Source: Selaginella moellendorffii (taxonomy: Eukaryota; Plantae; Lycopodiophyta). Taken from it: a stretch of 64,000 nt of DNA. The translations under genes were made by a program, and so were the position numbers. The notes under the pieces are model-generated. The model made no database searches and was not told the origin of the DNA. It saw only the letters and a program-made list of their open reading frames with translations. Below are positions 31,640-62,901 of the stretch, one piece after another (position 1 is the stretch's first letter; every line of letters starts with the position of its first letter). The stretch spans positions 434,001 to 498,000 of the forward strand of contig NW_003314315.1 in the NCBI RefSeq assembly GCF_000143415.4, in the 5' to 3' direction.

Positions 31640-32995
31640 CTAGAGATAGAGAAGCTCTTTTAGACGAGCGCGGGAAACCTCCATGGCCTCCATGGCCTTG
31701 GATTTGATTTCCTTTGCTCGTTTTCTCAGCGTTTCACTGCCCATCAAACTCCTGGAGGCTCGCTCGACTTCGCTCCTTCCAACAATCCTGGAGCTTCCAT
31801 CGCTGCTGTTCTTGCTCTCGATCCTCACCCCGACTCTCCACACGTCCACCATGAACTTACAGTTGATGGGCTGGTCGCCCATGAACGGCCACCCGATCAT
31901 CGGGACCCCGGAGCTCAAGCTCTCGAGCGTCGAGTTCCAGCCGCAGTGCGTGACAAATCCTCCCACGCTCGGGTGCCTGAGAATATCAATCTGCGAGCTC
32001 CATGACACGATCAGCCCCCGGTTTCCAATCCTCGTCCGCAAGCCCTGGAGGAAATCCCCGAGCTTTCGCTGGGAGCTCTCACGTAGGACCCAGAGAAAGC
32101 TCTGCTGGCTTGCCTCCAAGCCATAGCCGACCTCCATGACTTGTTCTTCCGGGAGCTCCACCATTGTTCCAAAGCACACGTACAACACGGACGAAACCTC
32201 TTGTGCGTCGAGCCATTCTTTTTGGACGTGATCTTCCATGCTTGATACCGCCCCGACGAGCACTGGCCCAACGTTGACAAGCTTGCCAAATCCCTGGTCC
32301 CTCAAATCACCCAAAGTTTGCTCCTCCAACTCGTCCAAAGTATTCATCATCAGCCATGGAGCCTTGAGCAGGTTCTTGAGCTTTCTCATCGAGCTAAAGC
32401 TCACTGGATCCAGAGGGTCCTCGGGGATGTCCGTGAAAACCGAGAGCTCGCAAGGAACGCCTGGTATCACGGACGAATCCACCACTTTCTTCTCGGGCGA
32501 TCGATCGTTCCTGGAGAGCGGAAGGAATCCTTTCTTCAGGAGCGTCTCGACGTTGACAGTGATGTGGAGCATGGCCGCCGACGACACCCAAAACGCAGCA
32601 ACGTTGCAAGCTAAGCTCTCGAGACGGTCGATAAGCAGGAAGTCGATGATGGCCAGGGAAACCGGCCCGAGCTCTGGAGCAGAAGCCGCGACCAGCTTCT
32701 TAATCTCGTCCGAGTTCCTGGCCATGACCTCGATGCTCTCAGGGAGCGTATAGCCGCTGCGGTTTCTATCGACTTCCAGAGCCTGGAATCTAATTGCTTG
32801 CCTCAATTTTTGGTCGCCGTCGCAGAGATGGTTGAGGGCCGAGAGTGATGCTTGGAGAGTGCTGCTCGTTGTGATGAATGTGATATCGGATCCAAGGGAC
32901 GCTAGCTGCACAGAGAGCTGGAGCAACGGATTAGTGTGGCCAGAGATTGGAAGAGGAATCACCACAACATGAGGCGGATTGCTTCGGGACGCCAT
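31640..32995 (-). CDS. Family 1 UDP-glycosyltransferase, intronless
   Basis: GHTNP and complete PSPG box WSSQ...HCGWNS...DQ. Confidence 0.95.
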   Translation of the reverse strand: MASRSNPPHVVVIPLPISGHTNPLLQLSVQLASLGSDITFITTSSTLQASLSALNHLCDGDQKLRQAIRFQALEVDRNRSGYTLPESIEVMARNSDEIKKLVAASAPELGPVSLAIIDFLLIDRLESLACNVAAFWVSSAAMLHITVNVETLLKKGFLPLSRNDRSPEKKVVDSSVIPGVPCELSVFTDIPEDPLDPVSFSSMRKLKNLLKAPWLMMNTLDELEEQTLGDLRDQGFGKLVNVGPVLVGAVSSMEDHVQKEWLDAQEVSSVLYVCFGTMVELPEEQVMEVGYGLEASQQSFLWVLRESSQRKLGDFLQGLRTRIGNRGLIVSWSSQIDILRHPSVGGFVTHCGWNSTLESLSSGVPMIGWPFMGDQPINCKFMVDVWRVGVRIESKNSSDGSSRIVGRSEVERASRSLMGSETLRKRAKEIKSKAMEAMEVSRARLKELLYL

Positions 32996-33229
32996 AGCTG
33001 ACAAGCTCTCTCGGCTTGAGACTTATACAAGAGAAGATTCTCAAAGTTATGCGTTAGGTAAGTTGATGACACCCCAACCGTCTAGTCGATCACATATGGA
33101 GACATAAACTCACAAGTGGCACCCACAAGACGGGTGGGCAGAGCCAGTGAGTGGGAGCGCGCCCGCAACGAGGACGCCACCAGATAATCCAACTTGCAAG
33201 AACTCGCTTACTCCATTTTGATACTTTTA

Positions 33230-34690
33230 TTTTAGAGCTCTAAGTAAAACTCTGACCATCGCAGCAGAGAAAGATTTGGAGTTCGTGCGCTACAAGGATT
33301 AGCCTCCGGCGAGAGGAGCTTGTTGACTTCTCCCCAGAGCTTAAGGCGCTGGGCGGTGCCGTGACGGCGCTCCCGCCGGGTGACGTGCGTCATCACGACG
33401 TTCTTGTGGGCTGGGACGGAGAAGTCGCTTGGGTGTGCCGAGGGTCGTGTTTTGGACGTCCACCATGACCGAGTGCCGTGTATAGTAACTTATCGAAGCT
33501 CGGAGCTTGCCAGTACGCGATCAGCTTGGGCTCTATGTCACGCTCTCGAGAATAACCTTGCCGCGGAAGTTTGGATCTGTGGCATGGAGTAGCGGTGTAG
33601 TCCAAGGCCTTGAGGTCCGGAAGTCCTGGAATCTTCACCGTGGTTCCGAAGTTATCTTCACCATGGTTCCGAGATCTAGCAATCCAAGTTATCTTCACCG
33701 TGGTTCCGAGATCTAGCAATCCAAGTTTTCTAAGATCACAAAGAAAAAGTTTGGAATTCGCGTACCTTTGATCGCATTCTCGGAGATGACTCCCTGGAAG
33801 GCAATGCGGTGAGAGCTCTTGAGCTATGAGGAATCAAAATCGGTCCTCTCTATCTGAACATCTCCACCGGGGACGACGATCCAGACGATCCAAACCAGGT
33901 ATTCCATGGCTGACAACAGGAGCCTCGATCGGTTCTCTACATTCCAGTCCCGGCAGTCGAATTCAAGCAGATAGCCCTGGAGGATGCATTCGCAGGCTCT
34001 TTCTGGCAACTGCGGGGAAGTAGGGAAATGTCGCCCTCGCTCACCAGAGCGCTGCCGGCAGGGATCACTTCGTCCAATTCCTCTGGTCTTTTGCCAAGAT
34101 CTCTGGAGGAAGAGCGTCCAGGAGCGGCACTCACGGCATCCTAGGAGCAAGAACAAAAGAGAGCAAACCGGTCAACACTCTAGTCAACACATAAGTTAAC
34201 GCCCAGTCTTACCAGCATGGTTCCGGCATGTTCTCGAGCGAGAGCAGGAAGCTCTGGCTTTGTTCTTGCTTGGCCATGGAAGATCGGTGCACGTCCATGT
34301 GCGCTTGGAGCAAGGCATGCACACTGTCCTCAGCTTGGGCAGCGAGAGATCCATTTGATCCATGGGAAGCAATCGCCGATGTGGAGGCCCCCGCTGAGCT
34401 CATTCGCGCTGGATCAAGCGGATGAAATCGTCCACATCGAAGCTTCGGCTCGTCCCAAACACGAGCGCTTGCATGATCCCGAGGACAGTCAGCTCCTGGC
34501 TCATGTTCACTGACATGCTCGTCCAAGTTCCTGGCCACGATCTCGATGACGCTGCGGTTTCTATCGACTTCCAGAGCCTAAAATCTAATGGCTTGCTTTG
34601 GTCGCCATGACAGAGATGGTTGAGGGCAAACAGTGATGCTCGGAGAGTGATGACCTTTACAACAAGAGAATATTCTCAAACTTATGCGTA
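33230..34690. pseudogene. Mosaic of UGT and P450 fragments in mixed orientation
   Basis: 33255-33505(+), 33505-33790(-) and 33790-34010(+) match the UGT at 35365; 34060-34520(-) is a P450 fragment; 34540-34690 matches the 5' part of the UGT at 31640. Confidence 0.85.
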
Positions 34691-35364: not shown

Positions 35365-36818
35365 ATGGAGGAACAACACTTGGATCACATACACATTCTC
35401 GCAGTGCCATTCTTCCTCAAGGGCCATGAGATCCCTCTCCTCCATCTCTGTCGCCATCTCCACTCTCTCACTGGCGGCCGGATCGCCGTCACGATCCTCC
35501 AGCTCCCGCAAAACAAGTCGCCACTCTCTGGAGGGGCGACACCATCGCAGCGAGAGAAAGGTTTGGAGTTTGTGCGCTACGAGGATTTGCCGCTGGAGCC
35601 TCCGGCCGAGAGGAGCTTGCAGCTCTTCCTCGACTTCTTCCCAAAGTTTAAGGCGCTGGGCGGTGCGGTGTCGGCGCTCTGGCGGCACCGCCGGGTGACG
35701 TGCGTCATCACCGACGTTCTCGTGGGCTGGGGTGGAGAAGTTGCCCGTGACTTGGGCGTGCCATGGGTCGCGTTTTGGACGTCCACCATGACCGAGCTTG
35801 CCGTGTATAGTAACTTACCAAGGCTCATCTCTGAGAATGCGATCAAAGGTACGTGAACTCCAAACCTTTTCTTTGTGATCTTAGAAATGGATTGCTAGAT
35901 CTCGAAGCCACGGTGAAGGTTCCAGGACTTCCGGACCTCAAGGCCTTGGACTACACGACGCTACACCATGCCACAGATCCAAACTTCCGCGGCAAGGTTC
36001 TTGTCGAGACCTTTGTGGAAGCCGTGCGGTATAGCACCCAAGCTGATCGAGTACTGGCAAACTCCTCCCACGCCCTGGAAGGCAATGCGGTGAGAGCTCT
36101 CGAGCTATGTGGAATCAACATCGTTCCAGTGGGTCCTCTCCATCTAAACATCTCCACCGGGGGTGATCCAGACGATCCAAACCAGGTGATTCCATGGCTG
36201 GACAAACAGGAGCCTCGATCGGTGCTCTACATTGCGTTTGGAACGGTCGCTCCAGTCCCGGCAGCCCAATTCGAGCAGATAGCCCTGGCTCTGGAATCTA
36301 CTAAGAACATCGCTTTCCTATGGGTGGTACGCCCGGAGCAGCTCAAGCTAGTACCGAAGGAATTCGGCTGTACCGCGCGGTACGCTTTCAAGTCTGGTGA
36401 CACCGTTAATGGGACGGTATACCGCGGGCTGCTAACCGACTGGGCACCCCAGGTTGCGGTCCTCGGGCACCGTGCAGTGGGCGGTTTCTTGACGCATTGT
36501 GGATGGAATTCGATCTTGGAGAGCATCACTGTTGGCGTTCCTGTGATCTCGATGCCTCGAATGGCCGATCAGTGCTTGACGCGCAAGATCTTGGACGAGG
36601 AGTGGGGGGTTTCGGTACGATTGGGTAACACGGTTACTGACGCTGTGAGCAAGACCGATTTGGAGGCTGCGATCGAGGAGCTCATGTTTGAAAGGCGGGA
36701 TGAGCTTGGAAAGAAAGCGAGCGATCTTGGAGAACTCGCTAGACAGGGCATGGAAGAAGGAGGATCTTCTCGATCCGGCATCGATTCCTTGGTCAAAGAC
36801 CTTTTACTGTGGAAGTAA
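35365..36818 (+). CDS. Family 1 UDP-glycosyltransferase, one intron (~35850-35898)
   Basis: GHEIP and PSPG WAPQ...HCGWNS...DQ. Confidence 0.94.
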
Positions 36819-36856
36819 ACGCTAGTCAAAAATTTCTTTATTGGTATTTGAAATTT

Positions 36857-37344
36857 CTAGAAGTGGAGTACGCGTAGATCGAAGGAGAACGTGGAATTGA
36901 TGTCCTCCACGATTCGATCGACGAGAGCGTAGCCTTTGGCAAACAAAAACTCGCCAGTGCCAGTAGCGATTGGGAGCTGACCACTGGAATTCGTGACGGC
37001 GCTGAGAAACGTAGGCTACTGCCCTGGAATTCGTCTAGAGTGAGCGTCACAGACACCAGAGATGTGAGGCTATCCATCGACACCACCGTGCTCGTCCCTC
37101 GAATCCTTCCTACTTCGCGGGAATCGCTCGATCGGCTCACAGTCACGGGATCATCCACGACCGCGATGGCTCCGAATGGATTCGCCGGGTTTCCCAGGCT
37201 GGGAACTCCAGTGGTGACGAGGAAATCGGTGACATTGAAGAAGTCCTGCCAAAAAAGCCTGCGGTGAAGGGATCTCGCGCTGGAAATCTGGAGAGCGACA
37301 AGCGCGATGGCCGAGAGGAAGAGTAATTTGTTAACGCTAGCCAT
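36857..37344 (-). pseudogene. Dirigent protein gene with a 1-nt frameshift near 37012
   Basis: Signal peptide, FGAIAVVDDP, VGRIRG; the alternate frame gives LPIATGTGEFLFAKGYA...VLHF stop. Confidence 0.85.
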
Positions 37345-37449
37345 TATGGAGAAATTTTCAAGGAGAAACGAAGTTTTAAACCAAAAGTTTGGTGCCAACC
37401 AACCAAAGATCTAGTGCCGTGTTGAGAACAACTATAGAAAAATCTACTT

Positions 37450-37819: not shown

Positions 37820-39278
37820 ATGGTGGACGATCAGCAAGTTCCACACCTCCTCGCCATCCCATTCTTCTTCCGGGGCCACGAGATCCCTCTCCTCCACCTC
37901 TGCCGCCACTTCAAATCCCGCGGAGCAAAGTTCCTCGTCACGATTCTTCGCACCTCCCGCAGCAAACCCACTGCTCCTCCCAAGGATCTGGCCGGGTTCG
38001 TGAGGTTCGAGGGGTTTCCAGACGATATCAATCTCCCGGCCGAGAGGAACTTGGAGCTCTTCATTCAATTCTTCAAACGGTTCCAGGGGGAGCTGGGCGA
38101 CTTCGTGCTTGACAGGTGGCAGTGCCGCCCGGTAACGTGCGTCATCTGCGACGTGCTCGTGGAGTGGGGCGAGCGCGTCGCGCGGCACCTGGGCGTTCCA
38201 TGGATCGCGTTCTGGACGTCCACCGTTTTGGAGATGGCGATGGCTTCCCACGTTCCACGGCTCATCGCGGAGAATGCAATAAAAGGTGAGTGAACGAACC
38301 AAAAGGAGAGGAAGCTCACTGTGTTTTTGCATAGATCCCGAGAGCATCATCAAGATTCCAGGCCTGCCGGATTTCCAAGTCCGCGACTACGTCACTCTGT
38401 CCAACGTGATCAATCCGAACTTCCCCATGAAGTTCATGATCGAGTCTCTCGTTGATACCGTGCGGCGTACCGCCGGGGCCGACATGATCCTCGCTAATTC
38501 CTCCGGCCTGCTAGAGGACGACGCTATCAAAACGCTGGAGAGCTCCGGGATCAAAGTCACTCCAGTCGGTCCCTTACACCTGATCGATCAAGACAACGAT
38601 CCCAAAGATCCAGACAAGGTAATCTCGTGGCTGGACGAGCAAGATCCAGCCTCGGTTCTCTACATTTGTTTTGGAACGGTGGCTCCAATGCCGGTTGGTC
38701 AGATGGAAGAGCTCGCAATGGCTCTTGATTCCACCGGAGTATCCTTTCTTTGGGTGGTGAGACACGACCACTTGAAGGACATACCGCCGGGATTCACCGC
38801 CAAGCACGGCATTTCCAACGGTACCAACGGTACAAATGGCGGTACCAACGGGTGTACCGCGCGGCACCGCGGGCTGCTAACCGACTGGGTGACCCAGCCG
38901 CGCGTCCTTGGGCACCGTGCCGTGGGCGGCTTCCTCACGCACTGCGGCTGGAACTCTGTGATGGAGAGCATCACTGCGGGAGTCCCGATGATCACGCGGC
39001 CGCTCATGGGCGATCAAACGCTGACAGCCGCGATGCTCAGGCAGGCATCCATGCCCGCGATCGCGCTCCCGACATCAAAGGGCGGTGCCGTGACCAAGAC
39101 GGAGATTGTGGCAGCCATCGAGGAGCTCATGGTGAGAGAGAGAGGCGCGGAGCTCCGGCGCCGTGCGGGTGATGCTGCGGCGCTCGTTCGCAGTGGGATG
39201 GAGAACGGCGGGTGCCTGGATTCTCTCGTCACTGAGCTCAACATTCTCGCCAAGAACCCTAAAAATCGTCTTGCCTAG
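37820..39278 (+). CDS. Family 1 UDP-glycosyltransferase, paralog of the 35365 gene, one intron (~38286-38334)
   Basis: GHEIP and PSPG WVTQ...HCGWNS...DQ. Confidence 0.94.
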
Positions 39279-40377: not shown

Positions 40378-40647
40378 GTGTGAAATGTACAAATTCTGAT
40401 CCACCATCTGATACGCAATAAAATCATTGATATGCTTACCTAGAGGAGTCGCTTTTCAAAATCCATCAATGCTTTCCATCTCGTTCTTGCCAATCTTCTA
40501 AACAACTTGAACCCTGTCACATTTACCACCACTCGAAGTTCTACAGAGGATTGGCAAGAATTAGAACTGATGGATTTTGAAAGCAAGTAAACATATCAAT
40601 GGAAGACAGATTTTATTGCGTATTAGAGATTTGAGTACATTTCACGC
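40378..40647. ncRNA. 270-nt fold-back hairpin, candidate MIRNA precursor with P450-derived stem
   Basis: Five nested complementary blocks; 40477-40499 is identical to P450 coding sequence. Expression unknown. Confidence 0.6.
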
Positions 40648-40750: not shown

Positions 40751-42313
40751 TTACTTGCGGAGAAGTGGAACCAATACAAGTGGACGAGCCCGCATGAGCG
40801 TGAACCCGACCCCCTCGCCCACGTCCACCTCTTTACCATCCGGTGTTGTCCAGTTGAACCTGTAGAGAAGATTGGCAAGAACGAGATGAACAGCAGTCAA
40901 CCCCAAGTTCATCCCCGGGCAGGATCGCCGGCCAAAGCCAAACGTCATGAGTTCCACGGCCGCATTGAATTCGCTGCTCATCCTCTCCGGGATGAACTCC
41001 AGAGGATTCTCCCAGATGCTTGGATCCCGGCCGATGGCGTAGAGGTTGATCAACACTTGGGTCTTGGCTGGGATCGTGTAGCCAGCTTCTTCAAGCTTTC
41101 ATACACGTTGATAACAAATTCAGAGATCTAGCGAGGATCAAACCTTTTAGACTACTTACCTTACAGTCGGTAGTGGATTCGCGTGGAACCATGAGTGGCG
41201 CCGGAGGGTGCTTGCGCAGGGTCTCCTTGACAATCGCGCCGAGGTACTTGAGCTTGGGAATGTCGGCCTCGCTCACCATGGCGCTACTAGCAGGGATCAC
41301 GTCGTCCAATTCCTTCTGAGCTTTTGCCAAGATTTGTGGATGAAGAAGTAGCTCTGTGAGGGCCCATTCTATCGCTGTGGCAGTCGTGTCCAGCCCTGCA
41401 CTCACAGCATCCTAGCAAGGACGGCCAACGAGTTAGTCAACACTCAAGTCAACCCCAGTCTTACCAGCATGAGGCACCGGATGGTAAGATCTGACATGTT
41501 GTCGAGCGAGAGCAAGACGTCCAGGAAGCTCTCGCCGCCATGTCCTTGCTTGGCTATAGAGGATCGGTGCTCTTCAATGTGTGCTTGAAGCAAGACATGG
41601 AATTTGGTTGCTAAGGTTCTCAGCTTGGGCAGCGAGAGATCCATCCATTTAAGCCATGGGATGTAATCGCCGATGTGTAGCCTCCCTCCCAGCTCGTTCG
41701 CCTGGTGGGCCAAGCGGAGGAAATCGTTGGCACCGAAGGTCCGGCTCGTCCCAAACACGAGCGTTTGCATGATCTCCAAGGTGAGGACGCTGAGCTCCTG
41801 GGTCATGTTCACCGTTCTTCTCAGATTCTGGGAGAGCATCGCCAGGAACTTCTCCATCTCCGCTTGCCTCACTGCCGCAAAGCTCCCCACGCGGCGCGCG
41901 GTGAAGAGCTCGAGCGTGCAGATCTTGCGGAGCTCCCTCCATCTCGCGCCATAGCGCGCGAAGACGAGATCGTCTGGGAGGATCGCCTCGGCAAACGTGA
42001 GCGATGGCCGCGAGGAGAAGATCCTGTCGTGTGTCTTGAGAATCTCTTGGGCGATCTTGGCTGAGGAGATGACGAGCGTGGGGGTGTAGCCCAGGCGGAG
42101 GTAGAAGATCGGGCCGAGCTTCTTGGCGAGATCGAAGAGGATGAGATGCGACCCGCGGGAATTGCTGGCCAGGAGTGGAATGTGGCCGAGGATTGGAAAG
42201 GCCCAGGGGCTTGGAGGCATGACATGAGAGCTGCGTGATTTAGATCGATCATAGTAGAAGATCACCAAGATGAAAGAAGCCAAGAAGGCGAAAAAAGCTG
42301 TGATGTGCTCCAT
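40751..42313 (-). CDS. Cytochrome P450, CYP71 clan, copy 1 (3 exons, appears intact)
   Basis: N-terminal anchor, PPSP hinge, [23 protein letters not shown]. Confidence 0.95.
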
Positions 42314-49860: not shown

Positions 49861-50294
49861 CTACTTACTGGCTCAGACCTGATTGAAAACTTTCATACTT
49901 GAACCTTGATGCATTGCTCATCCAAAGAACCAATAGAACAATGTCGTAAGTCCTTGTTGTCCAACCAACAGCATCCTATAAAAAAACTAGAGCACATGCT
50001 CATTCTCAATGAAAGACCAACTTGTAACTTCTGTGTTCTAAAGTTTTCCACATAAATTTTAGCAGTCGTTACTCAGTCATGCTAGACAAATTTCTCATTG
50101 AAAATGAAGAGAGAATGGTGGATTCTTGCCTTGAAAAACAGGGATTCTCCAGAAGTCTATCTCAAAAAGTGACATTCTCTACCATGCTTTCTCGAAAGTT
50201 GGAAGTTTCTGCTAATAACGTCTCTTTAAAAATAAAACACAAATATACAGTGCTGTACCTCAGCTCTTACTACAATCATTTGACTGTTGCTTCT

Positions 50295-51360
50295 TTGAAA
50301 ATATGAACCAGCCGCTCGCTGTTGGGCACACCTCCAGTGCTACTAAGCTCTTCGATTGCATCTCCCAGCGCAATGCTGCGACCTGGAACATGATGGTCCA
50401 TGCCTACGCCGTGTGACTCTTCTTTGATCAATGCATTGGTGATCACATTTGCCAAGAGCCGCTGTGCAGTGGAATTTGTGTAATCCGACATATAGAGCTC
50501 CAATCTGAAGAAGATCTTTGATTCCATGCCGGATCATGATGTGGTCTCTTGGATCTCGCTCATTTGCCTAGTCTAGGCATCTTAAGAATGCCAAAAACAC
50601 GTTTAATGGGGTGGAGTCTCACGATCATGTCTCGCAGATCTCGATGCTCATTGGCTATGTGGCGGTATTCTGGATCCGCAACTGCCAGGATATCTTGCTA
50701 CCTGGTGTCTCTGAGGCCGTGACATGGAACTCATTTATCACAACACTTGGCAAATCGAGGCAGTGAAATCGACCTTTGATCGAATGCCAAGGATCTCGTG
50801 TCATGGACAAATCTACTACTGTGCTACGTTCAGAATGGATTCCTCGAAGAATTGACAGGGCATTCCGTCATCTTCCCTTCACTAATGCAGTGCAAGTTGT
50901 GATCTTGGTGAATGCTCAGGGATATGGCCACCACAAAAGAGTTTGATTTCATGCTGGATCAATTTATGTGGTGGCATGGATGGCTATGGTGCAAGCTTTG
51001 TGGCTGCCAAGGCTTCATCAACCTCGCAAAGAACATCTTCGATCAAATCTAGAAGAAGAAACCAGTCTTTGGAGTGTGATGCTCCTCATGTATGCTGAGA
51101 ATGGGCATTTTGATGAGGCCATGAGGTTCTTTCACTAGATCCCATGCAAGACCATTGTCTGCTGGACAGTGTTCACACAAGTTTATGTCAACTTGGACAA
51201 CCTCAAAAAATTTGAGAGCATGAAGATGTGCAGCTTGGTTTCCTGGATGACCATGGTATGGGGTTATGCTCTAAACATGCATGACAATCGAGCAGTGCAA
51301 CTTATCAATCTCAAGGGCATCAAGATGGAAAAGGTGATGTCATTGTTGGTACACTTTTGT
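50295..51360 (+). pseudogene. Decayed PPR gene
   Basis: KLFDCISQRNAATWNMMV.AYA, FDSMPDHDVVSW and VSWMTMVWGYA in shifting frames. Confidence 0.8.
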
Positions 51361-54300
51361 TAAATATCAAATTGTTCTGGGTTCAATTTATAGTCATGCC
51401 TGTGACATTCACATGCTAATCTGCAGTGGTAATAAGGTCAAAATATATAGTGAATGAGACAAATTATTTCAATACCATCTAAACCACAATTATCCACAAC
51501 AATTATCTCAACACTGTTGTAGGACAAGTAAATCAATCATAATGGCTTCAATTGACCCAACCATATTACGTCCTTTGTGTAATTTGATAAAATTTGTGAC
51601 AGAAGATATATAAGAGGTTCTAGACTAACTTCTTCAATGACAGTTGAGTGACAAACTTTTAGCACATATCTCCATGTTCATCTATCATACTTTAGTACTG
51701 CTAGGACAACTTCAAATCCAATTATCTTCAACCACTTTTCTTTTGCAAATTGCTGGTACAGCGGGATACATCCACATACTGATAGTTTCATTATTTGTGA
51801 AATCAGCCATATCAATTCGTAGTCAACCTTTTGATCATCTCTCCAAGTCCTCATGAACTTTATAGACACTAAGTAGTAACCAATAAGTGAATGACATTCT
51901 CTTGATGAACCTATTTGTATCTCGTATTAGTCTAGTTCTCTTGAGAAAGTCTGCCACACACAAGAGGTGCTCACATGATAAGTCTATATTATCCACATTC
52001 ATATTATCACTATCTTATACCATACATGAGGATTATACAGAGTGGAAATGCCTAGAAAACTAGAAGCAGAGAAAAGCATCATCTCTTATTTCAAGTTTTT
52101 ACTTTCTAATCATCCCCAAAGGATATAAATGAAGAGTTAGTTGTGTCTTAGCACAAGGGTCACCACATCTATGATTCCTATATCACAAACACTTAAGAAT
52201 TGAATGGAATTGTTTACTTAAGAAATAGACTTCTCACTATGGACAATCGATAAGTACAAAGTAATCAAATCCAATTCCTCTGAGATAAGAAAAACTTTCC
52301 CTAAAAAAAGCAACCACCTTACATACACCTATCTCAACCATTAAGCTTGATTGCTTTGCTTAGAAGGACTAGCAAAAGTCATAGATATGCCAGGAGTTTT
52401 AGTAATTTCAAAATTTGTAATAATTTTTAACATAATTATAATTATAATATACATAGTTAATATAACATAATATAATATTTATATAAAAATCCCTTTTACA
52501 ATTGACCCTATCACCAATACACATTAGAACATAATAAATATAACTTATAACATAATATAACATTTACAACTTGGAATGCCAAGTGAAGTTTTGAATCTTC
52601 TACTGAGATGAGAATGCTAGCTATGGGATCTTATGGTTAAATGAGTTGTTTAAGGGTTGGCAAATTTAAATAAGGATTGGTAGCAAAGGAATAAGTATAA
52701 TTATGGTCATCTCAGACTCCATCTTAGACTCTATCTTAGGTCCATCTCAGACTCCATTTCAACACTTCCACATGTCATGTGTTGGTTAGAAATCCATGAT
52801 TGGGTTTGTTAACCAATAAAAAAATAGATATTACATATTTAAATTTGATCCTGTATATGATTAATTATAGGACACTTGGACAATTAAATATTATGGATAA
52901 ATATCTGAATAAATGAAACTTGGAGCTAAAACAATTATATTAGTTATAGTTACTGAAGAGACAAATTTTATATGAGATGAAGTTAGAGTTAAAATTATTG
53001 AAGTGAAAGTTCCAAAATACTGAAATTAATATGATAATTAGGAAATAATACTTAATTATTTGGATAGTAATTATTAAATTTACACATATTTATACAAATC
53101 TCAGGAGTATAAAAAATACTTTCAAGTAAGATAAAAGTGAAGTAGTGACATAATATATAGAGGATCCTCTATAACCTAATATAAAGGAGTTGAATGGCTC
53201 TAGTTATTCCATTTTATAATAAAGTCATCAGTGAAATTAATCATATTGATTTTCAGTTAACTCAGATATTTACTTTATTTTATTTTTTTCAATATTACAA
53301 ATTTCTAACACTTTATTTTTATATTAATATTTTTCATTAAATAGTTTTTTAATACATAAAAATAATATTGTATAAATATGATTGAGATATTGTTACCATA
53401 ATAGCCACATAATACACATCTTTAAGTGGAACAGTGAGTCCCATCATCATATAAAGTTTTTAGTATTATATATATAGAAACTTTAAAATTAAAAATTTTA
53501 AGCTTTAAAAAATTTATAAATTATAAATTATATCAATATCACTCTTGTAAATCTATAACAGCCAAAAATAATTCAGCCAGATGAATGTAATGCAATTATA
53601 AGAGAAATTTGTGAAAATATAATGTCAAATCTAGAGAATTGTTACTAGTTCGTAGATGGTTGAATGTCTTATATATGAGAATGAAATGGTATACCATCTC
53701 AAACTATGCTTACAAAAGAAGTAGAATCTCTCTTTGAATGCCAAGAATGTTTGTGTGAAGGGAATGTTAACTTGCTTAATAACTTGCCACAATATTTCAA
53801 AATACTATCTACCCATGGTATTGTTTTTTGGCACTCTAATAAGGTATTATATTGATAAGGTATTGTGAGTTGAAAATATCAAGGTATTCTTAAAATTTAA
53901 GTTTAACCCATATGCAATATAAAGCAAATCGTCCAAATCTATATTTAGTCTTGTTATGTCCAACATCTAAATTTGTGCACCATCCTATACTGTTTGTATC
54001 AGTAGAGTTGGAGATAGCATATTTAAAGAGTTTGTCTATGATTTCAAACATCAATAAAGAGGAATCACTTGGTAAAAATAAGAGTTACTTAAGTAATTTA
54101 TATTTCTACAACCATGACACCAATTTATTTTTAAATAACCAAATTCCATATTCAAGAATTGGTGATTGATTTTCTTAAACCTTTTCTAGTTTGCAGTGGA
54201 GATACTAACACCCCAAACTTCCCCCACATAGGTGAGGAATATAGTTACCTTAGTCTCATAGTATCCTAATCATTTTGTAATTTTCTTTGGGGAGCATAAC

Positions 54301-55399
54301 ATCATTTGTAGTACTTATATTCTTTGATTTAGATAAGGTGTTAGCTATCATATGTGAAAGAGTTATTTCTTGTAAGACTAAATATCATAATTAGAGTCTT
54401 AGCCATTTTAACAGCTAACCTTGTAATTAACAAAACTCAACCAGAACATGTAACTATAGCAAAAAGAAGGAAGGAGGTAAATAATAACTTTATACATCTT
54501 TAAAATGTTGATGCCACATTAAACTCTCAAAAGCATTGATGTATAAGCCAAAGACAATACACATCTTTGTTTAACTTTGATAGTGTATTCAATTTGTTTT
54601 AGTCCTTGGTAGTCCATAAGGATAATGACATAATTTTGTTTAATAGCAACTAGTAGTGTGTTACTTTTTTGTAGGTTTTAAAATAATTTTTCACAGAAAA
54701 CTATGTTGACCAAGATGATCTTCTATAATATGCTCATGAATTGTTTATGAAGTTGAGAGTTTCATTTTAGAGTTTTCATTTTAGCACTCTTTTATTCCAA
54801 ATGTTATTCAAAAATAGAAGGATTCCTTTTGAAAAAGCATTAGTAACTATGGTAAGCTAGTAACTGTAGCTTATATGAAACACCTATTGTTGCATGATAA
54901 AATGTGATAGGCATAAAATGTATTAAAAAGTCACTATTTTCTAAAGAATGCTTGTTTCATTTATTTCCAAGAAGTAATATTTATAGCTACACTTTTTTAC
55001 TCTTCATAGTTGCAAATCAAAGGGAAATATATACTATTGACTCTTGCATCCTTCTAACATCATATTGGTGAGATATATTTATCCTTAATCATAAGTTTAT
55101 ATTATTAAAAAAGAACACCTTTATAAAGTAGCTTATCAATTAAAACAAATTGGAAAACCAAAAATTTATAAATTTTCATATTATGAGTGCATGGAATATG
55201 AAAATAGGATATAGAAATGTGCATATTCATTAACCCAAAAACCCTAGTTTATATACAAGAGTGAGTGGTGAAAATTAAAACCAATCCAATAGGTATCAAA
55301 ATCCATAGTAATATATAACATCGTAATTATACACTTAGACATCATATCATCCCCTCCTCTTTAAAGGATAAAAGGTAGTCAAAGTTCTTTAGTTGATGG

Positions 55400-57935
55400 G
55401 CTGAAATTTAGATGAACATTAGGAGGAAGTACTGGTGGATCTATAGGTGGTACTAGTTGTTCTTAATCCCTTTATACGAAGTGTTTTTTACTTATTGCAT
55501 ATGTATAATTTCTAGAGGATTAACTTATTGAATATCATGTTGAACTTCATAAACTTGTGGTTCAACTTGCCACAACACCTGATATAGTCCCTTTTACTGA
55601 GCAAGGAGCCATTTAGGCAAACCATTTATTATAAGACTAGGAAAATAGACTAATACTAAATCATTCAGGATGATGATGGGAGTTGTAGTGCCATTATTGT
55701 CCCACTTGTATGCAGCTCAAATGTTTAGTAGACTCTGCTTAAAAAAGTGTAAAAATATTCACCAAATATTAGTCCAAAGACCTAGCATCGGCAACTCATA
55801 ACAATTGTGAAGGTGAACTCAACTTTGTTAGTAATATTAGATCATAGTAGCTTTTATTAGATCATATAAACTTCTATATGGTGAAGCACTAATAGAACTT
55901 TGCACCCTTGTGACATACATATACCGAAGAGATAATAAATAATCATTCTAATCCGAATGTTGAAAGCTTATATATTTCACAATCATTCCTTTGAAAGTCC
56001 AAATGAGCCATTCCACTAAACCATCTATCTGTGGATAATACACACTCGTAAAAGTGTAGTGTATCCCCAATCAAGATATTAAAACATGAAATGCTTTAGC
56101 CATAAATGCAAGACCATTACTTGAGAGAATCCGCTTTAAACAGAACACCAAGTGAATCAATTAGTCAAAGGTAATAATGACATATTCATTACCAGTAGTT
56201 AATTGTGGAAAAGACCCCATTAGATCAAACGCTATCAACTCAAATGGACATGAAATTGTAATTGACTTCAACCATCCTTCCATAACACGAAGAAAAGTAT
56301 TATGGACTTGGCACCAAACACAATTGCACATATATCGAACAACATCATATTGCATCTCCGATTAATAGAAAGACTTTTGTACCTTCTCAATCATACACTG
56401 ATATACCCACATAGAATAAGAGAGTCATTATAATATGGAAAAGGCATAGAATAAATATCATAAGTACAATTAGTTGTAAATGATCATCAAGATGAATCCC
56501 AACAATAAAGAAGGTTGTCATTAAGTTGATATTAAGAATGTAAATGTTGAAACGGCAAGTCATTAGTAAATGATGCAGGATTCTCAAACCCCTTACAAAG
56601 CCTTTGGATCCATAACTTAACCTTTTGAGCCTCACAAACATTGTCAAGTGAAGGTAAATTTTGTTTTGCACCTTGTGGACACTAAATATCAAGTACATCA
56701 ACTGTTGATAACACAAAATCCTTATATATACACAACCTTTAAATTGTATATCTAAAGCTTCAAAACCCACTGACTAATATGACCAACCAAGTTCTTCTAC
56801 TTCAATAATAAAATAACTATAGCATGATCACCTTTTAATAATGTTCAAGAACTATGCAAATATGTATAAACGTTTTCAAAACTCCAAACTATTAATAAAC
56901 ATTCTTTTTTCGTTGTGAAGTAGTTCACCTTTGCTAGTTGTAATGTACAATTGATGTACATAATAAGATGATACTGATTAATTACACTTGTAATTTTTTG
57001 CATTAAGACACCCTCAAAACCGATATCCAAAGCATCCACACGCAAAATGAAAAATCAAATGTAGTCAGGATATGTCAAAATTGGAGAAGTTGTTAATAGC
57101 TCTTAAATGCTTGTTTACAGTCCTCAAACCAGATAAAAGATGATGTTAATGACTTTAGTAATGCTTGCAATAGTGTAGTGTGATTAGAAAGATGATTAAC
57201 AAAATGACTAAGATACTACACCTTGCTCAAGAAACACTACACGTTATTCACACATTTCAGAGTAGGGACTTTTTGAACGGCCACAAGTTTGTTAGGATCA
57301 ACTTGCAAACCCTCACAAGAAATATAATACTATAAACTATATCTTTAAACATGCATTTCGACCACTCTAATTTTAAATCAACTTCTTATAACCGATTCAA
57401 CACTTTCCTAACATCATAAACATACTCCTCCTATGTCCTCTTCAAGTGAATCGAAACATATCAATGAAGTCAATAGTCACTTTTAGCATATTGTAAAGAA
57501 CCGCATCCATCATCTATTAAAAAGTCACTAAAGTGTTAGTTAAACCGAATGGCATCATCAATAATTTGTACAAACTAAATAGTGTATGAAAAATAGTTTT
57601 AGGAATATCCTCTTTTGTCATCGGCACTTGCCAATATTTAGAAGCAAGATCTAGTTTGGTGAGTTAACAACTTCTTCCTAGATGATCTAGGAGATAAAAA
57701 ATGTGAGGAAAAGGGTGCATATCTAAATAATCACTTTGTTTAATAAATGAATATTCTTATTAAGTTTTGTTACAAAATAAGGTTCACATGCCTAAAAATT
57801 TCAAAACTTTTGAATAACACCCTTCTTCAACATTTTTTTTATGTTTGTATGTAAAATTTTAATTTGCTTTGGTGACCGATGATAAATAGAAACTTTGATT
57901 TAACAAGTATCCCCAATTGGAATAGGATAACGTGT
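55400..57935 (-). mobile_element. Decayed Ty3/Gypsy pol, second copy
   Basis: YMCNCVWCQ, PFELIAFDLMGSFP, NYFTTKKECL; paralogous to 44190-46880. Confidence 0.88.
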
Positions 57936-59139
57936 TGTAATCTTTGCTTTTGAAAACAGAAGTAGAATAAAAAAGAACTATTAACTGTTGTTAATTAATA
58001 AGAGTTTTGATAGGGTTAAACTAAAACATAAGATGGAATTGAGAGATAAGAGACATGATGTTTGCCTATTTAGGTATTAAGCTTTTAAGCATAAAAGTGG
58101 CAAGAGGATGATGGATTGACAATGTATACAACCATGCAACACAAACCCTCAAGTAAGTAACAATCAAAAGTCAAAGTAGCATAGTGTTAGATAAAATGCA
58201 AAACATCATAGATGAGTGGACAAAAACTTGTCAAGTGAAATGCAATAAGGATGATGCTATTATCAATATCAAAATTGGTGATGGACCTCGAAAAACCAAG
58301 TACTTCAAAGGCATTTCTTTTATGTCATGAACTTTTTTGTTCCCTTAGAAACTGAAGAAAAAAAAAGTGATGTTTGTTTCTTTGAAGATAAAAATGATAG
58401 TTCCAATGATGAATTAGGTTGGTTGTACGTAGAAGTGATTGACTAATGTTTTCTATGTTTGTGATGTGAATTGATGAAGATGTTGAGCATTGTAAAAATA
58501 ATTATATGCAAGTAATTTCAGTCGATTTAAATCAGTTATGGCCATAGAAGACGTGTAGATATACACGTGATAATGAGAACTTAATGTTTCCTTGCTATAC
58601 TCTTAACTATTATGGCCTTGGAAAAAATACATCTACATCCAGAGGTAGTCGACTACGAATTGATATGGCTGATTTCACAAATAATGAAACTATCAGTATG
58701 TGGATGTATCCCGCTGTACCAGCAATTTGCAAAAGAAAAGTGGTTGAAGATAGTTGGATTTGAAGTTGTCCTAGCAGTACTAAAGTATGATAGATGAACA
58801 TGGAGATATGTGTTAAAAGTTCGTCACTTAACTGTCATTGAAGTAGTTAGTCTAGAACCTTCTATGTATCTTCTGTCACAAATTTTATCAAATTACACAA
58901 AGGACGTAATATGGTTGGGTCAATTGAAGCCGTTATGATTAAGATGATTTACTTGTCCTACAACAGTGTTGAGATAATTGTTGTGGATAGTTGTGGTTTA
59001 AATGATACACTAATGGTATTGAAATAATTTGTCTCATTCACTATGTGTTTTGACCTTATTACCATTGCAGATTAGCATGTGAATGTCACAGGCATGACTA
59101 TAAATTGAACCCAGAAGAATTTAATATTTAACAAAAGTG

Positions 59140-59975
59140 TACGACAGCCCTCAGCCATGACATCACCTTTTCCATCTTGATGCCCTTGAGATTGATAAGT
59201 TGCACTGCTTGATTGTCATGCATGTTTAGAGCGTAAGCCCAAACCATTGTCGTCCAGGAAACCAAGCTGCACATCTTCATGCTCTCAAAATTTTTGAGAT
59301 TGTCCAAGTTGACATAAACTTGTGTGAAAGCTGTCCAGCAGACAATGGTCTTGCATGGGATCTAGTGAAAGAACCTCATGGCCTCATCAAAATGCCCAAT
59401 TTGCACTGCATTAGTGAAGGGAAGATGACGGAATGCCCTGTCAATTCTTCGAGGAATCCATTCTGAACGTAGCACAGTAGTAGATTTGTCCATGACACGA
59501 GATCCTTGGCATTCGATCAAAGGTCGATTTCACTGCCTCGACTTGCCAAGTGTTGTGATAATTGAGTCACGGCCTCAGAGACACCAGGCAGCAAGATAGC
59601 CTGGCAGTTGCTGATCCAGAATACCGCCACATATCCAATGAGCATCGAGATCTGCGAGACAAGATCGTGAAACTCCACCCAATTAAACGTGTTCTTGGCA
59701 TAAATGAGCGAGATCCAAGAGACCACATCATGATCCGGCATGGAATCAAAGATCTTCTTCAGATTGGAGCTCTATATGTCAGATTGCACAAATTCCACTG
59801 CACAGCGGCTCTTGGCAAATGTGATCACCAATGCATTGATCAAAGAAGAGTCACAAGGCGTAGGCATGGACCATCATGTTCCAGGTCGCAGCATTGCGCT
59901 GGGAGATGCAATCGAAGAGTTTAGTAGCACTGGAGGTGTGCCCGACAGCGAGCGGCTGGTTCATATTTTCAAAGA
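59140..59975 (-). pseudogene. Decayed PPR gene (mirror copy)
   Basis: Reverse complement of 50295-51360 with an internal deletion. Confidence 0.78.
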
Positions 59976-61337
59976 AGTAAGAGCTGAGGTACAGCACTGT
60001 ATATTTGTGTTTTATTTTTAAAGAGACGTTATTAGCAGAAACTTCCAACTTTCGAGAAAGCATGGTAGAGAATGTCACTTTTTGAGATAGACTTCTGGAG
60101 AATCCCTGTTTTTCAAGGCAAGAATCCACCATTCTCTCTTCATTTTCAATGAGAAATTTGTCTAGCATGACTGAGTAACGACTGCTAAAATTTATGTGGA
60201 AAACTTTAGAACACAGAAGTTACAAGTTGGTCTTTCATTGAGAATGAGCATGTGCTCTAGTTTTTTTATAGGATGCTGTTGGTTGGACAACAAGGACTTA
60301 CGACATTGTTCTATTGGTTCTTTGGATGAGCAATGCATCAAGGTTCAAGTATGAAAGTTTTCAATCAGGTCTGAGCCAGTAAGTAGAGTCTCTTGAGGAA
60401 ATTCTTAAGGAATGTTACAATCAGAATCAAAATTTCCTATAGATTTGGAAATGGAACCTCTGACCAGAGCTCCAGTTTTTCAAGCCTTCTGCCAATTCTC
60501 TGGATTGATGAGATCTCATCAATCCAACACGCAGCTTTGGCAGCCACAATTATGTCCAGAGAATTGTTGCTCCTGCCTGTGTCATGAGTCCCTTCAATTC
60601 CATGTCTCTGCAATTGAGGCACTTGCAAGCTTGCTCAGTCCTTGATTAAAAATCCATCAATATGACCAAAGCAATACTTGTCTTTCTATTCTGAGCAGAA
60701 ATGCAAAAGTTAATCCTAAGGACTTAACTATTGCCAAAGCATTATTGAGTTGATGATGTTATATGGGATCACTACTAAAGAAATTTAGAATTGGACAAAG
60801 CAGTAAAGTGTAAAAATGTGAGCCATTTCCTTGTAATGGTTTACCTCTTGACAAACTAATTTGTCTTTAGACTCTTAAAGAGAAATTCACATAAGAGCTA
60901 TAAGAAGTTAGTGCAAGCAAAGCAGGAAGGGAAATAGTAATGGTAATAAAAGAAGGAACTTGGTGCATTGTTCTTTTTTTAAATAAATTTGCAACCATGA
61001 ACAGTTTGAAATCCAAAAAACATCTTTGAAGACTTAATTTTGTGTAATAGCTACATTCATTGCTAGTATATTCTAAATATATCCATTCATTTACACATGC
61101 TGGAGCCCAAAAATGGGCCCAGTATCCAAACAAAGCTTGTGCAAAGTAAGACCAGAACAGATTAGAGAGAGGAAGAAATCAAGATCTTTGCCCTGGTAGA
61201 TCTTTTGAGATAATTGCCTGAGAACTGAACCGAAGCCCATTGGACCAGGATCATGGCAGATTAGGAGCTTCCAATCTAACCTTCGCACAAAGCAAAATTA
61301 ATAAACACACTCTGTTTATTATAGTCAATATGTTTGA

Positions 61338-62901
61338 CTACTTGCGGAGAAGTGGAACCAATGCAAGTGGACGAGCCCGCATGAGCGTGAACCCGACCCC
61401 CTCGCCCACGTCCACCTCTTTACCATCCGGTGTTGTCCAGTTGAACCTGTAGAGAAGATTGGCAAGAACGAGATGAACAGCAGTCAACCCCAAGTTCATC
61501 CCCGGGCAGGATCGCCGGCCAAAGCCAAACGTCATGAGTTCCACGGCCGCATTGAATTCGCTGCTCATCCTCTCCGGGATGAACTCCAGAGGGTTCTCCC
61601 AGATTTTTGGATCCCGGCCGATGGCGTAGAGGTTGATCAACACTTGGGTCTTGGCTGGGATCATGTAGCCAGCTTCTTCAAGCTTTCATACACGTTGATA
61701 ACAAATTCAGAGATCTAGCGAGGATCAAACCTTTTAGACTACTTACCTTACACTCGGCGGTGGATTCGCGTGGAACCATGAGTGGCGCCGGAGGGTGCTT
61801 GCGCAGGGTCTCCTTGACAATCGCGCCGAGGTACTTGAGCTTGGGAATGTCGGCCTCGCTCACCATGGCGCTACTAGCAGGGATCACGTCGTCCAATTCC
61901 TTCTGGGCTTTTGCCAAGATTTGTGGATGAAGAAGTAGCTCCGTGAGAGCCCATCCTATCGCTGTGGCAGTCGTGTCCAGCCCTGCACTCACAGCATCCT
62001 AGCAAGAGCGGCCAGCGAGTTAGTCAACACTCAAGTCAACCCCCAGTCTTACCAGCATGAGGCACCGGATGGTAAGATCTGACATGTTGTCGAGCGAGAG
62101 CAAGACGTCCAGGAAGCTCTCGCCGCCATGTCCTTGCTTGGCTATAGAGGATCGGTGCTCTTCAATGTGTGCTTGAAGCAAGCCATGGAAATTATCTGCT
62201 AAGATCCTCAGCTTGGGCAGCGAGGGATCCATCCATTTTAGCGATGGGATGTAATCGCCGATGTGTAGGCTCCCGCCCAGCTCGTTCCCCTGGCGGATCA
62301 AGTGGAGGAAATCTTTGGCATCGAAGGTCCGGCTCGTCCCAAACACGAGCGTTTGCATGATCTCCAAGGTGAGGACGGTGAGCTCCTGGGTCATGTTCAC
62401 CGTTCTTCCCAGATTCTGGGAGAGCATCGCCAGGAACTTCTCCATCTCCACTTGCCTCACTGCCGCAAAGCTCCCCACGCGGCGCGCGGTGAAGAGCTCG
62501 AGCGTGCAGATCTTGCGGAGCTCCCTCCATCTCGCGCCATAGCGCGCGAAGACGAGATCGTCTGGGAGGATCGCCTCGGCAAACGTGAGCGATGGCCGCG
62601 AGGAGAAGGTCCTGTCGTGGGACTTGAGGATCTCTTGGGCGATCTTGGCTGAGGAGATGACGATCGTGGGGGTGTAGCCCAGGCGGAGGTAGAAGATCGG
62701 GCCGAGCTTCTTGGCGAGATCGAAGAGGATGAGATGTGGCCCGCGGGAAGTGCTGGCCAGGAGTGGAATGTGGCCGAGGATTGGAAAGGCCCGGGGGCTT
62801 GGAGGCATGACATGGGAGCTGCGTGATTTAGATCGATCATAGCAGAAGATCACCAAGAAGAAAGAAGCCAAGAAGGCGAAAAAAACTGTGATGTGCTCCA
62901 T
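61338..62901 (-). CDS. Cytochrome P450, CYP71 clan, copy 3 (3 exons, appears intact)
   Basis: Same motifs as copy 1; exon 1 open; ATG at 62901. Confidence 0.94.

What the first reader, a model, noticed from the sequence alone, without database searches (positions are those of the whole stretch)
31640..62901. Candidate biosynthetic gene cluster: 3 UGTs (two types), dirigent, 3 CYP71-clan P450s
Seen: across ~31 kb every recognisable intact gene is a UGT or P450, with a dirigent gene between two UGTs that shares a divergent promoter with one of them. Known: dirigents steer radical coupling of phenolics, and P450 plus UGT tailoring is typical of lignan, neolignan and flavonoid glycosides. Inference: three non-homologous enzyme classes side by side suggest a defence-metabolite cluster for a coupled phenolic glycoside in a lycophyte. 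No scaffold synthase is visible in the window, and the dirigent is frameshifted here.
Basis: partly seen in the sequence, partly recalled or inferred. Interest (0 to 1): 0.75.

Follow-up and report, generated by a model that had tools for sequence, protein, structure and literature searches.

The report
Spikemoss UGT, dirigent, P450 gene neighbourhood
In the spikemoss Selaginella moellendorffii, three sugar-transferase genes, one small dirigent gene and a young, unstable row of CYP792A P450 copies do sit side by side; this meets the formal rule for a candidate metabolic gene cluster, but nothing yet shows that they work in one pathway.

Summary
The window is S. moellendorffii GL377619.1:434001-498000. 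It carries:
- UGT-A, intact;
- a mosaic of UGT and P450 pseudogene fragments;
- UGT-B1 and UGT-B2, both intact, each with one 49-50 nt intron;
- between them, a dirigent gene with a 1-bp deletion, which is intact on the other haplotype;
- three CYP792A P450 copies, two intact and one broken by a 10-bp deletion.

The dirigent and UGT-B2 start codons lie head to head, 475 bp apart.

About 20 of the 31 kb is AT-rich repeat plus recent P450 duplication (P1 vs P3 dS 0.04, dN/dS 0.8). The two haplotypes differ in P450 copy number (3 vs 4) and in the orientation of a 15-kb segment. CYP792A and UGT-B paralogues elsewhere have no UGT, dirigent or P450 neighbours. No scaffold enzyme or oxidase gene lies within 10 kb on either side.

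The locus satisfies plantiSMASH's saccharide rule, and its lignan rule on the other haplotype. Such loci are common in this genome: 53-93 are predicted. I could not test co-expression or synteny.

The scan already noted the same arrangement on another piece of this genome (s1-395671). Its follow-up also found a shared pathway unsupported.

Verdict: a real but ordinary neighbourhood of tailoring genes. A co-functional cluster is possible but unproven.

The parts
31640..32995 (-). UGT-A: intact, intronless family-1 UDP-glycosyltransferase, 451 aa. The allele on the other haplotype is XP_002981172, named 'UGT85A4' by RefSeq.
   Evidence: Pfam UDPGT 100.7 bits. The exact sequence is in the collection, and the allele is 98% identical. 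The PSPG box and N-terminal His are read from the translation. Allele Smo154272 is transcribed.
33267..34648 (.). Pseudogene mosaic: a UGT-B-like fragment (+, 33267-33979), a P450-like fragment (-, 33978-34513) and a UGT-A-like fragment (-, 34406-34648).
   Evidence: Self-blastn 70-80% identity. tblastn gives 35-50% protein identity in broken frames. ORFs here have no Pfam match. The same fragments are present on the other haplotype.
35365..36818 (+). UGT-B1: intact two-exon UGT (35365-35848, 35899-36818; 50-nt intron), 467 aa, XP_024543543.
   Evidence: Sequence and splice sites. Exon 2 is 100% identical to P0060. Pfam UDPGT.
36857..37344 (-). Dirigent gene with a 1-bp deletion near 37009. 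The intact allele on the other haplotype is XP_024541818, 162 aa. Its stop codon is 38 nt from the UGT-B1 stop. Its ATG is 475 bp from the UGT-B2 ATG.
   Evidence: Three-frame translation. Alignment with L002:5607-6095. Pfam Dirigent 84.6 bits for the intact allele. PDB hits are pterocarpan synthases, DRR206 and AtDIR6. Atlas result.
37820..39278 (+). UGT-B2: intact two-exon UGT (37820-38285, 38335-39278; 49-nt intron), 469 aa, XP_002982507.
   Evidence: Matches P0202.
40479..40565 (+). Imperfect hairpin in the UGT-B2/P1 spacer. One arm contains a 23-nt exact copy of P450 exon-3 sequence.
   Evidence: Inverted repeat I5. Exact 23-nt matches to 40866-40888, 48772-48794 and 61453-61475.
40751..42313 (-). 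P1: intact CYP792A P450. Exons are 41465-42313, 41160-41411 and 40751-41095; 481 aa by the RefSeq-style splice. Locus tag SELMODRAFT_116580.
   Evidence: Pfam p450 on each exon. Splice sites and frame. Matches P0188.
42841..46902 (.). AT-rich repeat X (33% GC), with no recognisable ORF.
47356..48909 (+). P2: CYP792A9 pseudogene. A 10-bp deletion at about 47730 in exon 1 shifts the frame. The database model is an N-terminally truncated 354-aa protein.
   Evidence: DNA alignment of the three copies. P0187.
48950..51827 (.). 3' flank that was duplicated together with the P450. It forms one arm of a palindrome with 58648-61297.
   Evidence: The same flank follows the dispersed copy in L003.
51826..57958 (.). 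AT-rich repeat X' (29% GC), a copy of X.
58648..61297 (.). The inverted copy of the P450 3' flank.
   Evidence: Inverted repeats I1 and I6-I11, 94-99% identical.
61338..62901 (-). P3: intact CYP792A P450. Exons are 62053-62901, 61747-61998 and 61338-61682; 481 aa, XP_024543352 / SELMODRAFT_116635.

Best explanation
This is a real, compact neighbourhood of specialised-metabolism 'tailoring' genes in Selaginella moellendorffii. It was built by repeated local duplication and has not been shown to act as one pathway.

The old core is about 11 kb (31640-42313). It holds UGT-A, two anciently diverged UGT-B paralogues flanking a small divergent dirigent gene, and one CYP792A P450. The remaining 20 kb is a young array that is still rearranging. 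Its unit is roughly [AT-rich repeat + CYP792A + 3' flank].

Shown:
- the gene models and their integrity;
- the duplication structure and the differences between haplotypes;
- family membership of each gene.

Inferred:
- The UGTs glycosylate small molecules and the P450s oxidise them.
- The dirigent, where intact, binds a phenol-derived quinone-methide or radical intermediate.
- The adjacency most likely reflects birth-and-death evolution of large families that lie side by side, not selection for a co-inherited pathway.

The head-to-head dirigent/UGT-B2 pair is the piece most likely to be functionally coupled.
For: Identity and gene models:
- The window is GL377619.1.
- Models have canonical splice sites and lengths equal to the database records.

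The P450 array is young:
- The P450 copies are 92-97% identical in DNA, and the palindrome arms are up to 99% identical.
- P1 vs P3 gives dS 0.039, dN 0.032, dN/dS 0.81. That dS is no larger than the allelic dS of 0.02-0.05.
- P2 is broken.

The haplotypes differ:
- The other haplotype has four CYP792A genes, all on one strand.
- Window segment 42673-57976 is inverted relative to it.

No recurrent association between the families:
- Further CYP792A copies lie on other scaffolds next to unrelated genes.
- A UGT-B1-like paralogue lies about 75 kb away among PPR and MYB genes.

The core is older:
- Pseudogene fragments of UGT-B, P450 and UGT-A at 33267-34648 repeat the order and orientation of the intact genes. 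This is consistent with an older segmental duplication of the neighbourhood.

The flanks are unrelated genes:
- Left: DSP phosphatase, PPR, kinase.
- Right: PPR, an AlkB-type 2OG oxygenase, MLO.

The genes are mostly under constraint: allelic dN/dS is about 0.4 for UGT-A, UGT-B1 and P1, so they are functional genes under moderate constraint.

Loci of this kind are common here: 53 (v1.0) or 93 (v2.0) plantiSMASH candidates in this assembly.
Against: - The tight packing of four non-homologous or anciently diverged genes within 8 kb, kept on both haplotypes, is what a functional cluster would look like.
- So is a 475-bp head-to-head dirigent/UGT-B2 spacer.
- The pseudogene mosaic suggests that the UGT-P450 adjacency has lasted a long time.
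- Lignan and neolignan glucosides are known from the genus.
- Co-expression was not tested, so co-function is not excluded.
Confidence: 0.6

Rival explanations
1. A true biosynthetic gene cluster. An unlinked laccase or peroxidase makes phenoxy radicals. The dirigent steers their coupling into a lignan, neolignan or biflavonoid-type dimer. CYP792A enzymes oxidise the dimer, and UGT-A and UGT-B glycosylate it.
For: - Three enzyme classes are adjacent on both haplotypes.
- The formal plantiSMASH lignan and saccharide rules are met.
- The dirigent/UGT-B2 pair is head to head.
- Coupled phenolic glucosides are known in Selaginella.
- The UGT-P450 adjacency predates the haplotype split.
Against: - No oxidase or scaffold gene lies within 10 kb.
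- The dirigent is a null allele in this haplotype.
- The dirigent aligns W-Q-D to the F-H-D motif and Gly to the conserved Arg of GePTS1.
- The P450s are recent near-neutral duplicates, and their paralogues elsewhere lack these neighbours.
- More than 95% of dirigent proteins have no known activity.
- An earlier follow-up on the allelic piece reported the P450s silent where the other genes are active. I did not verify this.
Confidence: 0.17
2. Only a two-gene module is functional. The dirigent and UGT-B2, and perhaps UGT-B1, share a bidirectional promoter and act on the same phenolic. UGT-A and the CYP792A array are bystanders.
For: - The ATGs are 475 bp apart and head to head.
- The dirigent sits exactly between two UGT-B paralogues that are only 50-54% identical, so the arrangement is old.
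- The arrangement is the same on both haplotypes.
Against: - No expression data are available for either gene.
- The dirigent has a null allele.
- The UGT-B1-like paralogue 75 kb away has no dirigent partner.
- Head-to-head pairs are common in a compact genome.
Confidence: 0.15
3. Part of the P450 array as shown in the window is an assembly artefact. This applies to the palindrome and the inverted 15-kb segment. The cause would be collapsing or mis-orienting near-identical repeats and the two haplotypes of this Sanger assembly. This rival concerns the structure only and is compatible with any of the functional readings.
For: - The palindrome arms are 97-99% identical, which is the level of allelic identity.
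- The other haplotype shows a simple direct array of four copies.
- The window's P3 looks like a chimera of two copies from the other haplotype.
Against: - The window contains no N.
- P2 carries a private 10-bp deletion and its own substitutions.
- Structural polymorphism is common in tandem arrays.
Confidence: 0.08

Closest known systems
plantiSMASH 'saccharide' and 'lignan-saccharide' putative plant clusters
   Same: At least three biosynthetic genes of different kinds lie within a few kb, including UDPGT, and Dirigent on the other haplotype. This is exactly the published rule (Table S2 of 10.1101/2025.10.28.683968).
   Different: The rule is only a detection rule. This genome has 53-93 such loci, including 2 lignan-saccharide loci in v1.0. 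I could not check whether this locus is among them. No product or co-expression is known.
Hydroxynitrile and cyanogenic glucoside clusters (CYP79 + CYP71-clan P450 + UGT85; sorghum dhurrin, Lotus and cassava linamarin)
   Same: A CYP71-clan P450 lies next to a UGT that RefSeq names after UGT85. These are listed as UGT+CYP 'saccharide' clusters.
   Different: There is no CYP79 or other entry enzyme in or near the window. UGT-A's best solved relatives are spread over many UGT groups, so UGT85 orthology is not shown.
Predicted rice chromosome-1 lignan cluster (two dirigents + two dioxygenases; PMC6444639)
   Same: A dirigent gene sits next to tailoring oxidoreductases, and the locus was proposed from adjacency.
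   Different: The rice locus has an mQTL overlap and partial co-expression. This locus has neither. Its partners here are UGTs and P450s.
Ordinary tandem arrays of plant P450s and UGTs (birth-and-death evolution)
   Same: Near-identical copies, a pseudogene, copy-number and orientation differences between haplotypes, dispersed paralogues, and dN/dS near 0.8 between copies.
   Different: Three or four different families abut here within 11 kb, which a single-family array does not explain.

Membership tests
Plant biosynthetic gene cluster (co-functional sense) | At least three non-homologous biosynthetic genes physically adjacent | tested here: met
   UGT-A, UGT-B1/B2, the dirigent and CYP792A lie within 31640-42313, with no unrelated recognisable gene between them.
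Plant biosynthetic gene cluster (co-functional sense) | Genes encode steps of one pathway | not testable with these tools
   No biochemical data exist. There is no literature on CYP792 or on the locus tags.
Plant biosynthetic gene cluster (co-functional sense) | Co-expression of the member genes | tested here: inconclusive
   Only the UGT-A allele Smo154272 was found in the stored part of the expression atlas table. It shows 17-62 TPM in most samples and 3-4 TPM in three. The other IDs were not in the stored part.
Plant biosynthetic gene cluster (co-functional sense) | Scaffold-forming or entry enzyme in the cluster | tested here: not met
   No synthase, laccase, peroxidase or CYP79 lies in the window or within 10 kb to the right. 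The neighbours are a phosphatase, PPRs, a kinase, an AlkB-type oxygenase and MLO.
Plant biosynthetic gene cluster (co-functional sense) | Adjacency conserved in related species | not testable with these tools
   The adjacency is shared by both haplotypes. No orthologues from other species were in the collections: the best non-Selaginella hits are at most 39% identical for UGT-B and the P450, and there were none for the dirigent.
plantiSMASH 2.0 'saccharide' / 'lignan' rule | At least 3 biosynthetic genes, including UDPGT (saccharide) or Dirigent (lignan) | tested here: met
   The saccharide rule is met in this haplotype. The lignan rule is met only where the dirigent is an annotated intact gene, on the other haplotype. 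The program itself was not run.
Dirigent proteins (PF03018) | Full-length Dirigent domain | tested here: met
   The intact allele scores 84.6 bits over profile positions 3-145 of 148. PDB relatives are 6OOC, 6OOD, 4REV and 5LAL. The Atlas structure has TM 0.82 to dirigent clusters.
Dirigent proteins (PF03018) | Intact reading frame in this window | tested here: not met
   There is a 1-bp deletion near 37009 compared with the other haplotype.
Dirigent proteins (PF03018) | F-H-D motif and the Arg that lines the pocket (GePTS1 Phe48-His49-Asp50, Arg145; PMC7450108) | tested here: not met
   In the HMMER alignment to 6OOC the motif reads W-Q-D, and the Arg position aligns to Gly (motif description). 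This rests on a pairwise alignment and on the chain's numbering, so it is a lead rather than proof of inactivity.
Plant family-1 UGTs | PSPG box ending in D-Q and an N-terminal catalytic His | tested here: met
   Both features were read in the translations of UGT-A, UGT-B1 and UGT-B2. Pfam UDPGT matches. Full-length matches to many solved plant UGTs.
CYP71-clan (A-type) P450, family CYP792A | Heme-binding Cys motif, K-helix E-x-x-R, I-helix A-G-x-D-T-T; nearest characterised relatives in the CYP71 clan | tested here: met
   The motifs were read. Pfam p450 scores 329 bits. The best solved relatives are CYP76AH1, CYP76AH3, CYP93C and CYP73A. UniProt names are CYP792A1/4/5/8/9.

The most novel reading that the evidence does not exclude
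This is a lycophyte-specific gene cluster in which a divergent dirigent protein, two lineage-specific UGT types and CYP792A P450s together make a coupled phenolic glycoside (lignan, neolignan or biflavonoid type). It would be the first experimentally supportable dirigent-containing plant cluster, and it would show that metabolic clustering arose independently in lycophytes.
Probability: 0.12. Interest if true: 0.7.

Novelty: new member of a known kind. Interest (0 to 1): 0.3.

Why it matters
If the genes act together, the locus would give a genetic entry point into Selaginella lignan, neolignan or biflavonoid glycoside biosynthesis. No dirigent, P450 or UGT has yet been assigned to that chemistry. 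It would also extend plant metabolic clustering to lycophytes.

As it stands, the locus is mainly a well-resolved example of two things. First, recent tandem duplication inflates apparent cluster size. Second, the two haplotypes of this assembly differ in copy number, orientation and in which copies are broken.

Tried and rejected
- **Co-expression.** The bioRxiv expression atlas (10.1101/744326) holds a TPM table, but it was cut when stored. Only Smo154272 (the UGT-A allele) was found. Eighteen other gene IDs were absent. The Plant Cell version, PMC7145505, is not held.
- **Literature.** Searches for the locus tags, accessions and CYP792 found nothing relevant.
- **Synteny in other species.** The word searches returned no lycophyte orthologues outside S. 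moellendorffii, so there was nothing to look up.
- **plantiSMASH output for this scaffold.** The supplement has genome-level counts only. GL377619 is not mentioned.
- **Frameshifts in UGT-B1/B2.** Rejected: both are spliced at canonical sites.
- **TE protein domains in the AT-rich repeats.** None found.
- **UGT group assignment from solved structures.** The hits are spread over many groups, so no substrate class can be inferred.
- **The large representative search and structure prediction.** Not run. Family membership was already clear, and neither would bear on the cluster question.
- **Exact-product look-ups.** P0004, P0006 and P0062 were not on record.
- **Spliced models.** Exons were searched by reference. 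Whole-protein searches used the database's own records. dN/dS was summed exon by exon.
Full report
**Where this is.**
UGT-A's exact protein sequence is on record for Selaginella moellendorffii scaffold GL377619.1. Window position w corresponds to record position 434000+w. The allelic region lies on GL377612.1, referred to here as 'hapB' (loci L002, L006, L007). It is collinear with window 21681-42462 at 95-97% identity.

**Gene content.**
- UGT-A (31640-32995, minus strand) is intronless, 451 aa and intact. It has Pfam UDPGT, a PSPG box and the N-terminal His. Its hapB allele is 98% identical and is named 'UGT85A4' by RefSeq.
- UGT-B1 and UGT-B2 each appear as two overlapping ORFs. The break is a GT..AG intron of 50 or 49 nt at the same codon in both. 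The spliced lengths of 467 and 469 aa equal the database records XP_024543543 and XP_002982507.
- UGT-A is 26-30% identical to UGT-B. B1 and B2 are 50-54% identical in protein and 65% in DNA, so they are old paralogues.
- The dirigent gene (36857-37344, minus strand) lies between B1 and B2. Its stop is 38 nt from the B1 stop. Its ATG is 475 bp from the B2 ATG, head to head.
- In the window the dirigent lacks one C near 37009, which shifts the frame. The hapB allele is an intact 162-aa ORF, XP_024541818, and is otherwise about 99% identical.

**The P450s.**
- All three have the same three-exon structure.
- P1 and P3 are intact at 481 aa. P2 has a 10-bp deletion in exon 1 at about 47730. Its database model, CYP792A9, is an N-terminally truncated 354-aa protein.
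- UniProt names place the copies in CYP792A.
- The best non-Selaginella relatives are at most 39% identical CYP71-clan proteins.
- The best solved relatives are CYP76AH1, CYP76AH3, CYP93C and CYP73A.
- No functional literature on CYP792 exists in the library.

**How the 31 kb is built.**
- Only 31640-42313 is gene-dense, at 51% GC.
- The rest consists of an AT-rich repeat (X at 42841-46902 and X' at 51826-57958; 29-33% GC) and a palindrome (47312-51827 against 58648-62945). The palindrome arms are 97-99% identical.
- No ORF in these stretches matches Pfam.
- Exon-by-exon Nei-Gojobori counts give P1 vs P3 dS 0.039, dN 0.032 and dN/dS 0.81.
- The dS between alleles of neighbouring genes is 0.02-0.05. 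So the P450 copies are no older than the haplotype divergence, or they are being homogenised, and they evolve almost neutrally.
- HapB has four CYP792A genes, XP_024541819 to XP_024541822, all on one strand. They form a direct array of about 11-kb units of [X + P450 + flank].
- Relative to hapB, window segment 42673-57976 is inverted, and the window has one copy fewer.
- The hapB allele of P1 has an altered C-terminal tail.
- Further CYP792A copies, with the same 3' flank, lie on other scaffolds next to unrelated genes: an RPA-like gene and an aldehyde dehydrogenase.
- A UGT-B1-like paralogue at 87% identity lies about 75 kb to the left, among PPR and MYB genes.
- The dirigent has no close paralogue in the word search.

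**An older layer.**
Between UGT-A and UGT-B1 lie three degenerate fragments: UGT-B (+), P450 (-) and UGT-A (-), at 33267-34648. They have the same order and orientation as the intact UGT-A(-)/UGT-B(+)/P450(-) genes, and they are also present in hapB. This is consistent with an older segmental duplication of a UGT-A/UGT-B/P450 neighbourhood followed by reciprocal decay. On that reading, the UGT-P450 adjacency is older than the recent P450 burst. This is inference from order and similarity only.

**Boundaries.**
- To the left lie a dual-specificity phosphatase, PPR genes, an unknown ORF and a kinase.
- To the right of P3 lie a PPR gene, an AlkB-type 2OG oxygenase, an unknown gene and MLO.
- There is no scaffold synthase, CYP79, laccase or peroxidase.

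**Is it a cluster?**
- Formally yes. plantiSMASH 2.0 calls a 'saccharide' locus when at least 3 biosynthetic genes include a UDPGT. It calls a 'lignan' locus when they include a Dirigent.
- Such calls are frequent in this two-haplotype assembly. The totals are 53 in v1.0 and 93 in v2.0. The v1.0 set includes 20 saccharide, 8 lignan and 2 lignan-saccharide loci.
- Chemical plausibility exists. Syringaresinol, matairesinol and lariciresinol glucosides, neolignan glycosides and biflavonoids are reported from Selaginella (PMC3650682).

Several points weigh against a shared pathway:
- The P450 count comes from recent duplication.
- Paralogues of each family elsewhere are not associated with the other families.
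- The dirigent is a null allele in one haplotype.
- More than 95% of dirigent proteins have no known function.
- This dirigent aligns W-Q-D to the nearly universal F-H-D motif and Gly to the conserved Arg of GePTS1.

Allelic dN/dS of about 0.4 for UGT-A, UGT-B1 and P1 shows that these are constrained, living genes. UGT-A's allele Smo154272 is transcribed at 17-62 TPM in most atlas samples. Expression of the other genes could not be retrieved.

**Earlier notes of this scan.**
- The same arrangement was noted on another piece of this genome (s1-395671). I take that piece to be hapB.
- Its follow-up states that the P450s appear silent where the other genes are active. I confirmed the hapB arrangement but could not verify the expression claim.
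- Note s1-433196 describes a P450-derived hairpin. I confirmed an imperfect 30-nt-arm hairpin at 40479-40565 containing a 23-nt exact match to exon 3 of all three P450 copies.

**Method note.**
Exons were searched by reference, and whole-protein searches used database records returned by the tools.

**Verdict.**
- The most likely reading (0.6) is a neighbourhood of independently duplicating tailoring genes.
- A true dirigent-UGT-P450 pathway cluster (about 0.15) or a smaller dirigent/UGT-B module (about 0.15) remains open.

Noticed in passing
window 40479-40565 (spacer between UGT-B2 and P1): An imperfect hairpin with 30-nt arms. One arm carries a 23-nt exact copy of P450 exon-3 sequence that is shared by P1, P2 and P3. 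It could be a source of small RNAs against the CYP792A copies.
   Followed up: partly
window 39591-40021: Nested inverted repeats (39591-39626/39986-40021 and 39643-39683/39923-39963), resembling a roughly 430-bp MITE. A 23-nt piece also occurs in the 3' flanks of P2 and P3 (49026-49048, 61199-61221).
   Followed up: no
window 42673-57976 versus L007/L006 (GL377612.1): A roughly 15-kb segment (repeat X, P2, flank, repeat X') is inverted relative to the other haplotype. That haplotype has four P450 copies in direct orientation, against three here. This is either a structural polymorphism or an assembly error.
   Followed up: partly
window 36819-36856: Only 38 nt separate the stop codons of the convergent UGT-B1 and dirigent genes, so their 3' UTRs must overlap if both are transcribed.
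   Followed up: no
L002:1-3295 / proteins P0006, P0199 (GL377612.1): The other haplotype's allele of P1 (CYP792A1) ends in an unrelated roughly 25-residue tail after the heme-binding region. This suggests a frameshift near its 3' end. Different copies are therefore damaged on the two haplotypes.
   Followed up: no
window 2735-6600 versus 11843-15369: A roughly 3.5-kb direct duplication, 83-93% identical, covering PPR-type genes in the left part of the window.
   Followed up: no
L003 (GL377581.1:2409098-2430661): A dispersed CYP792A copy with the same 1.5-3 kb 3' flank as the window copies. It lies near a gene with a Rep_fac-A_C domain and a short P450 3'-end fragment. This hints that the P450 and its flank move as one unit.
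   Followed up: partly
window 33393-34363 (-): The GenBank annotation calls a 242-aa gene here, with no Pfam match. It overlaps the P450 and UGT pseudogene fragments and is probably a spurious model.
   Followed up: partly
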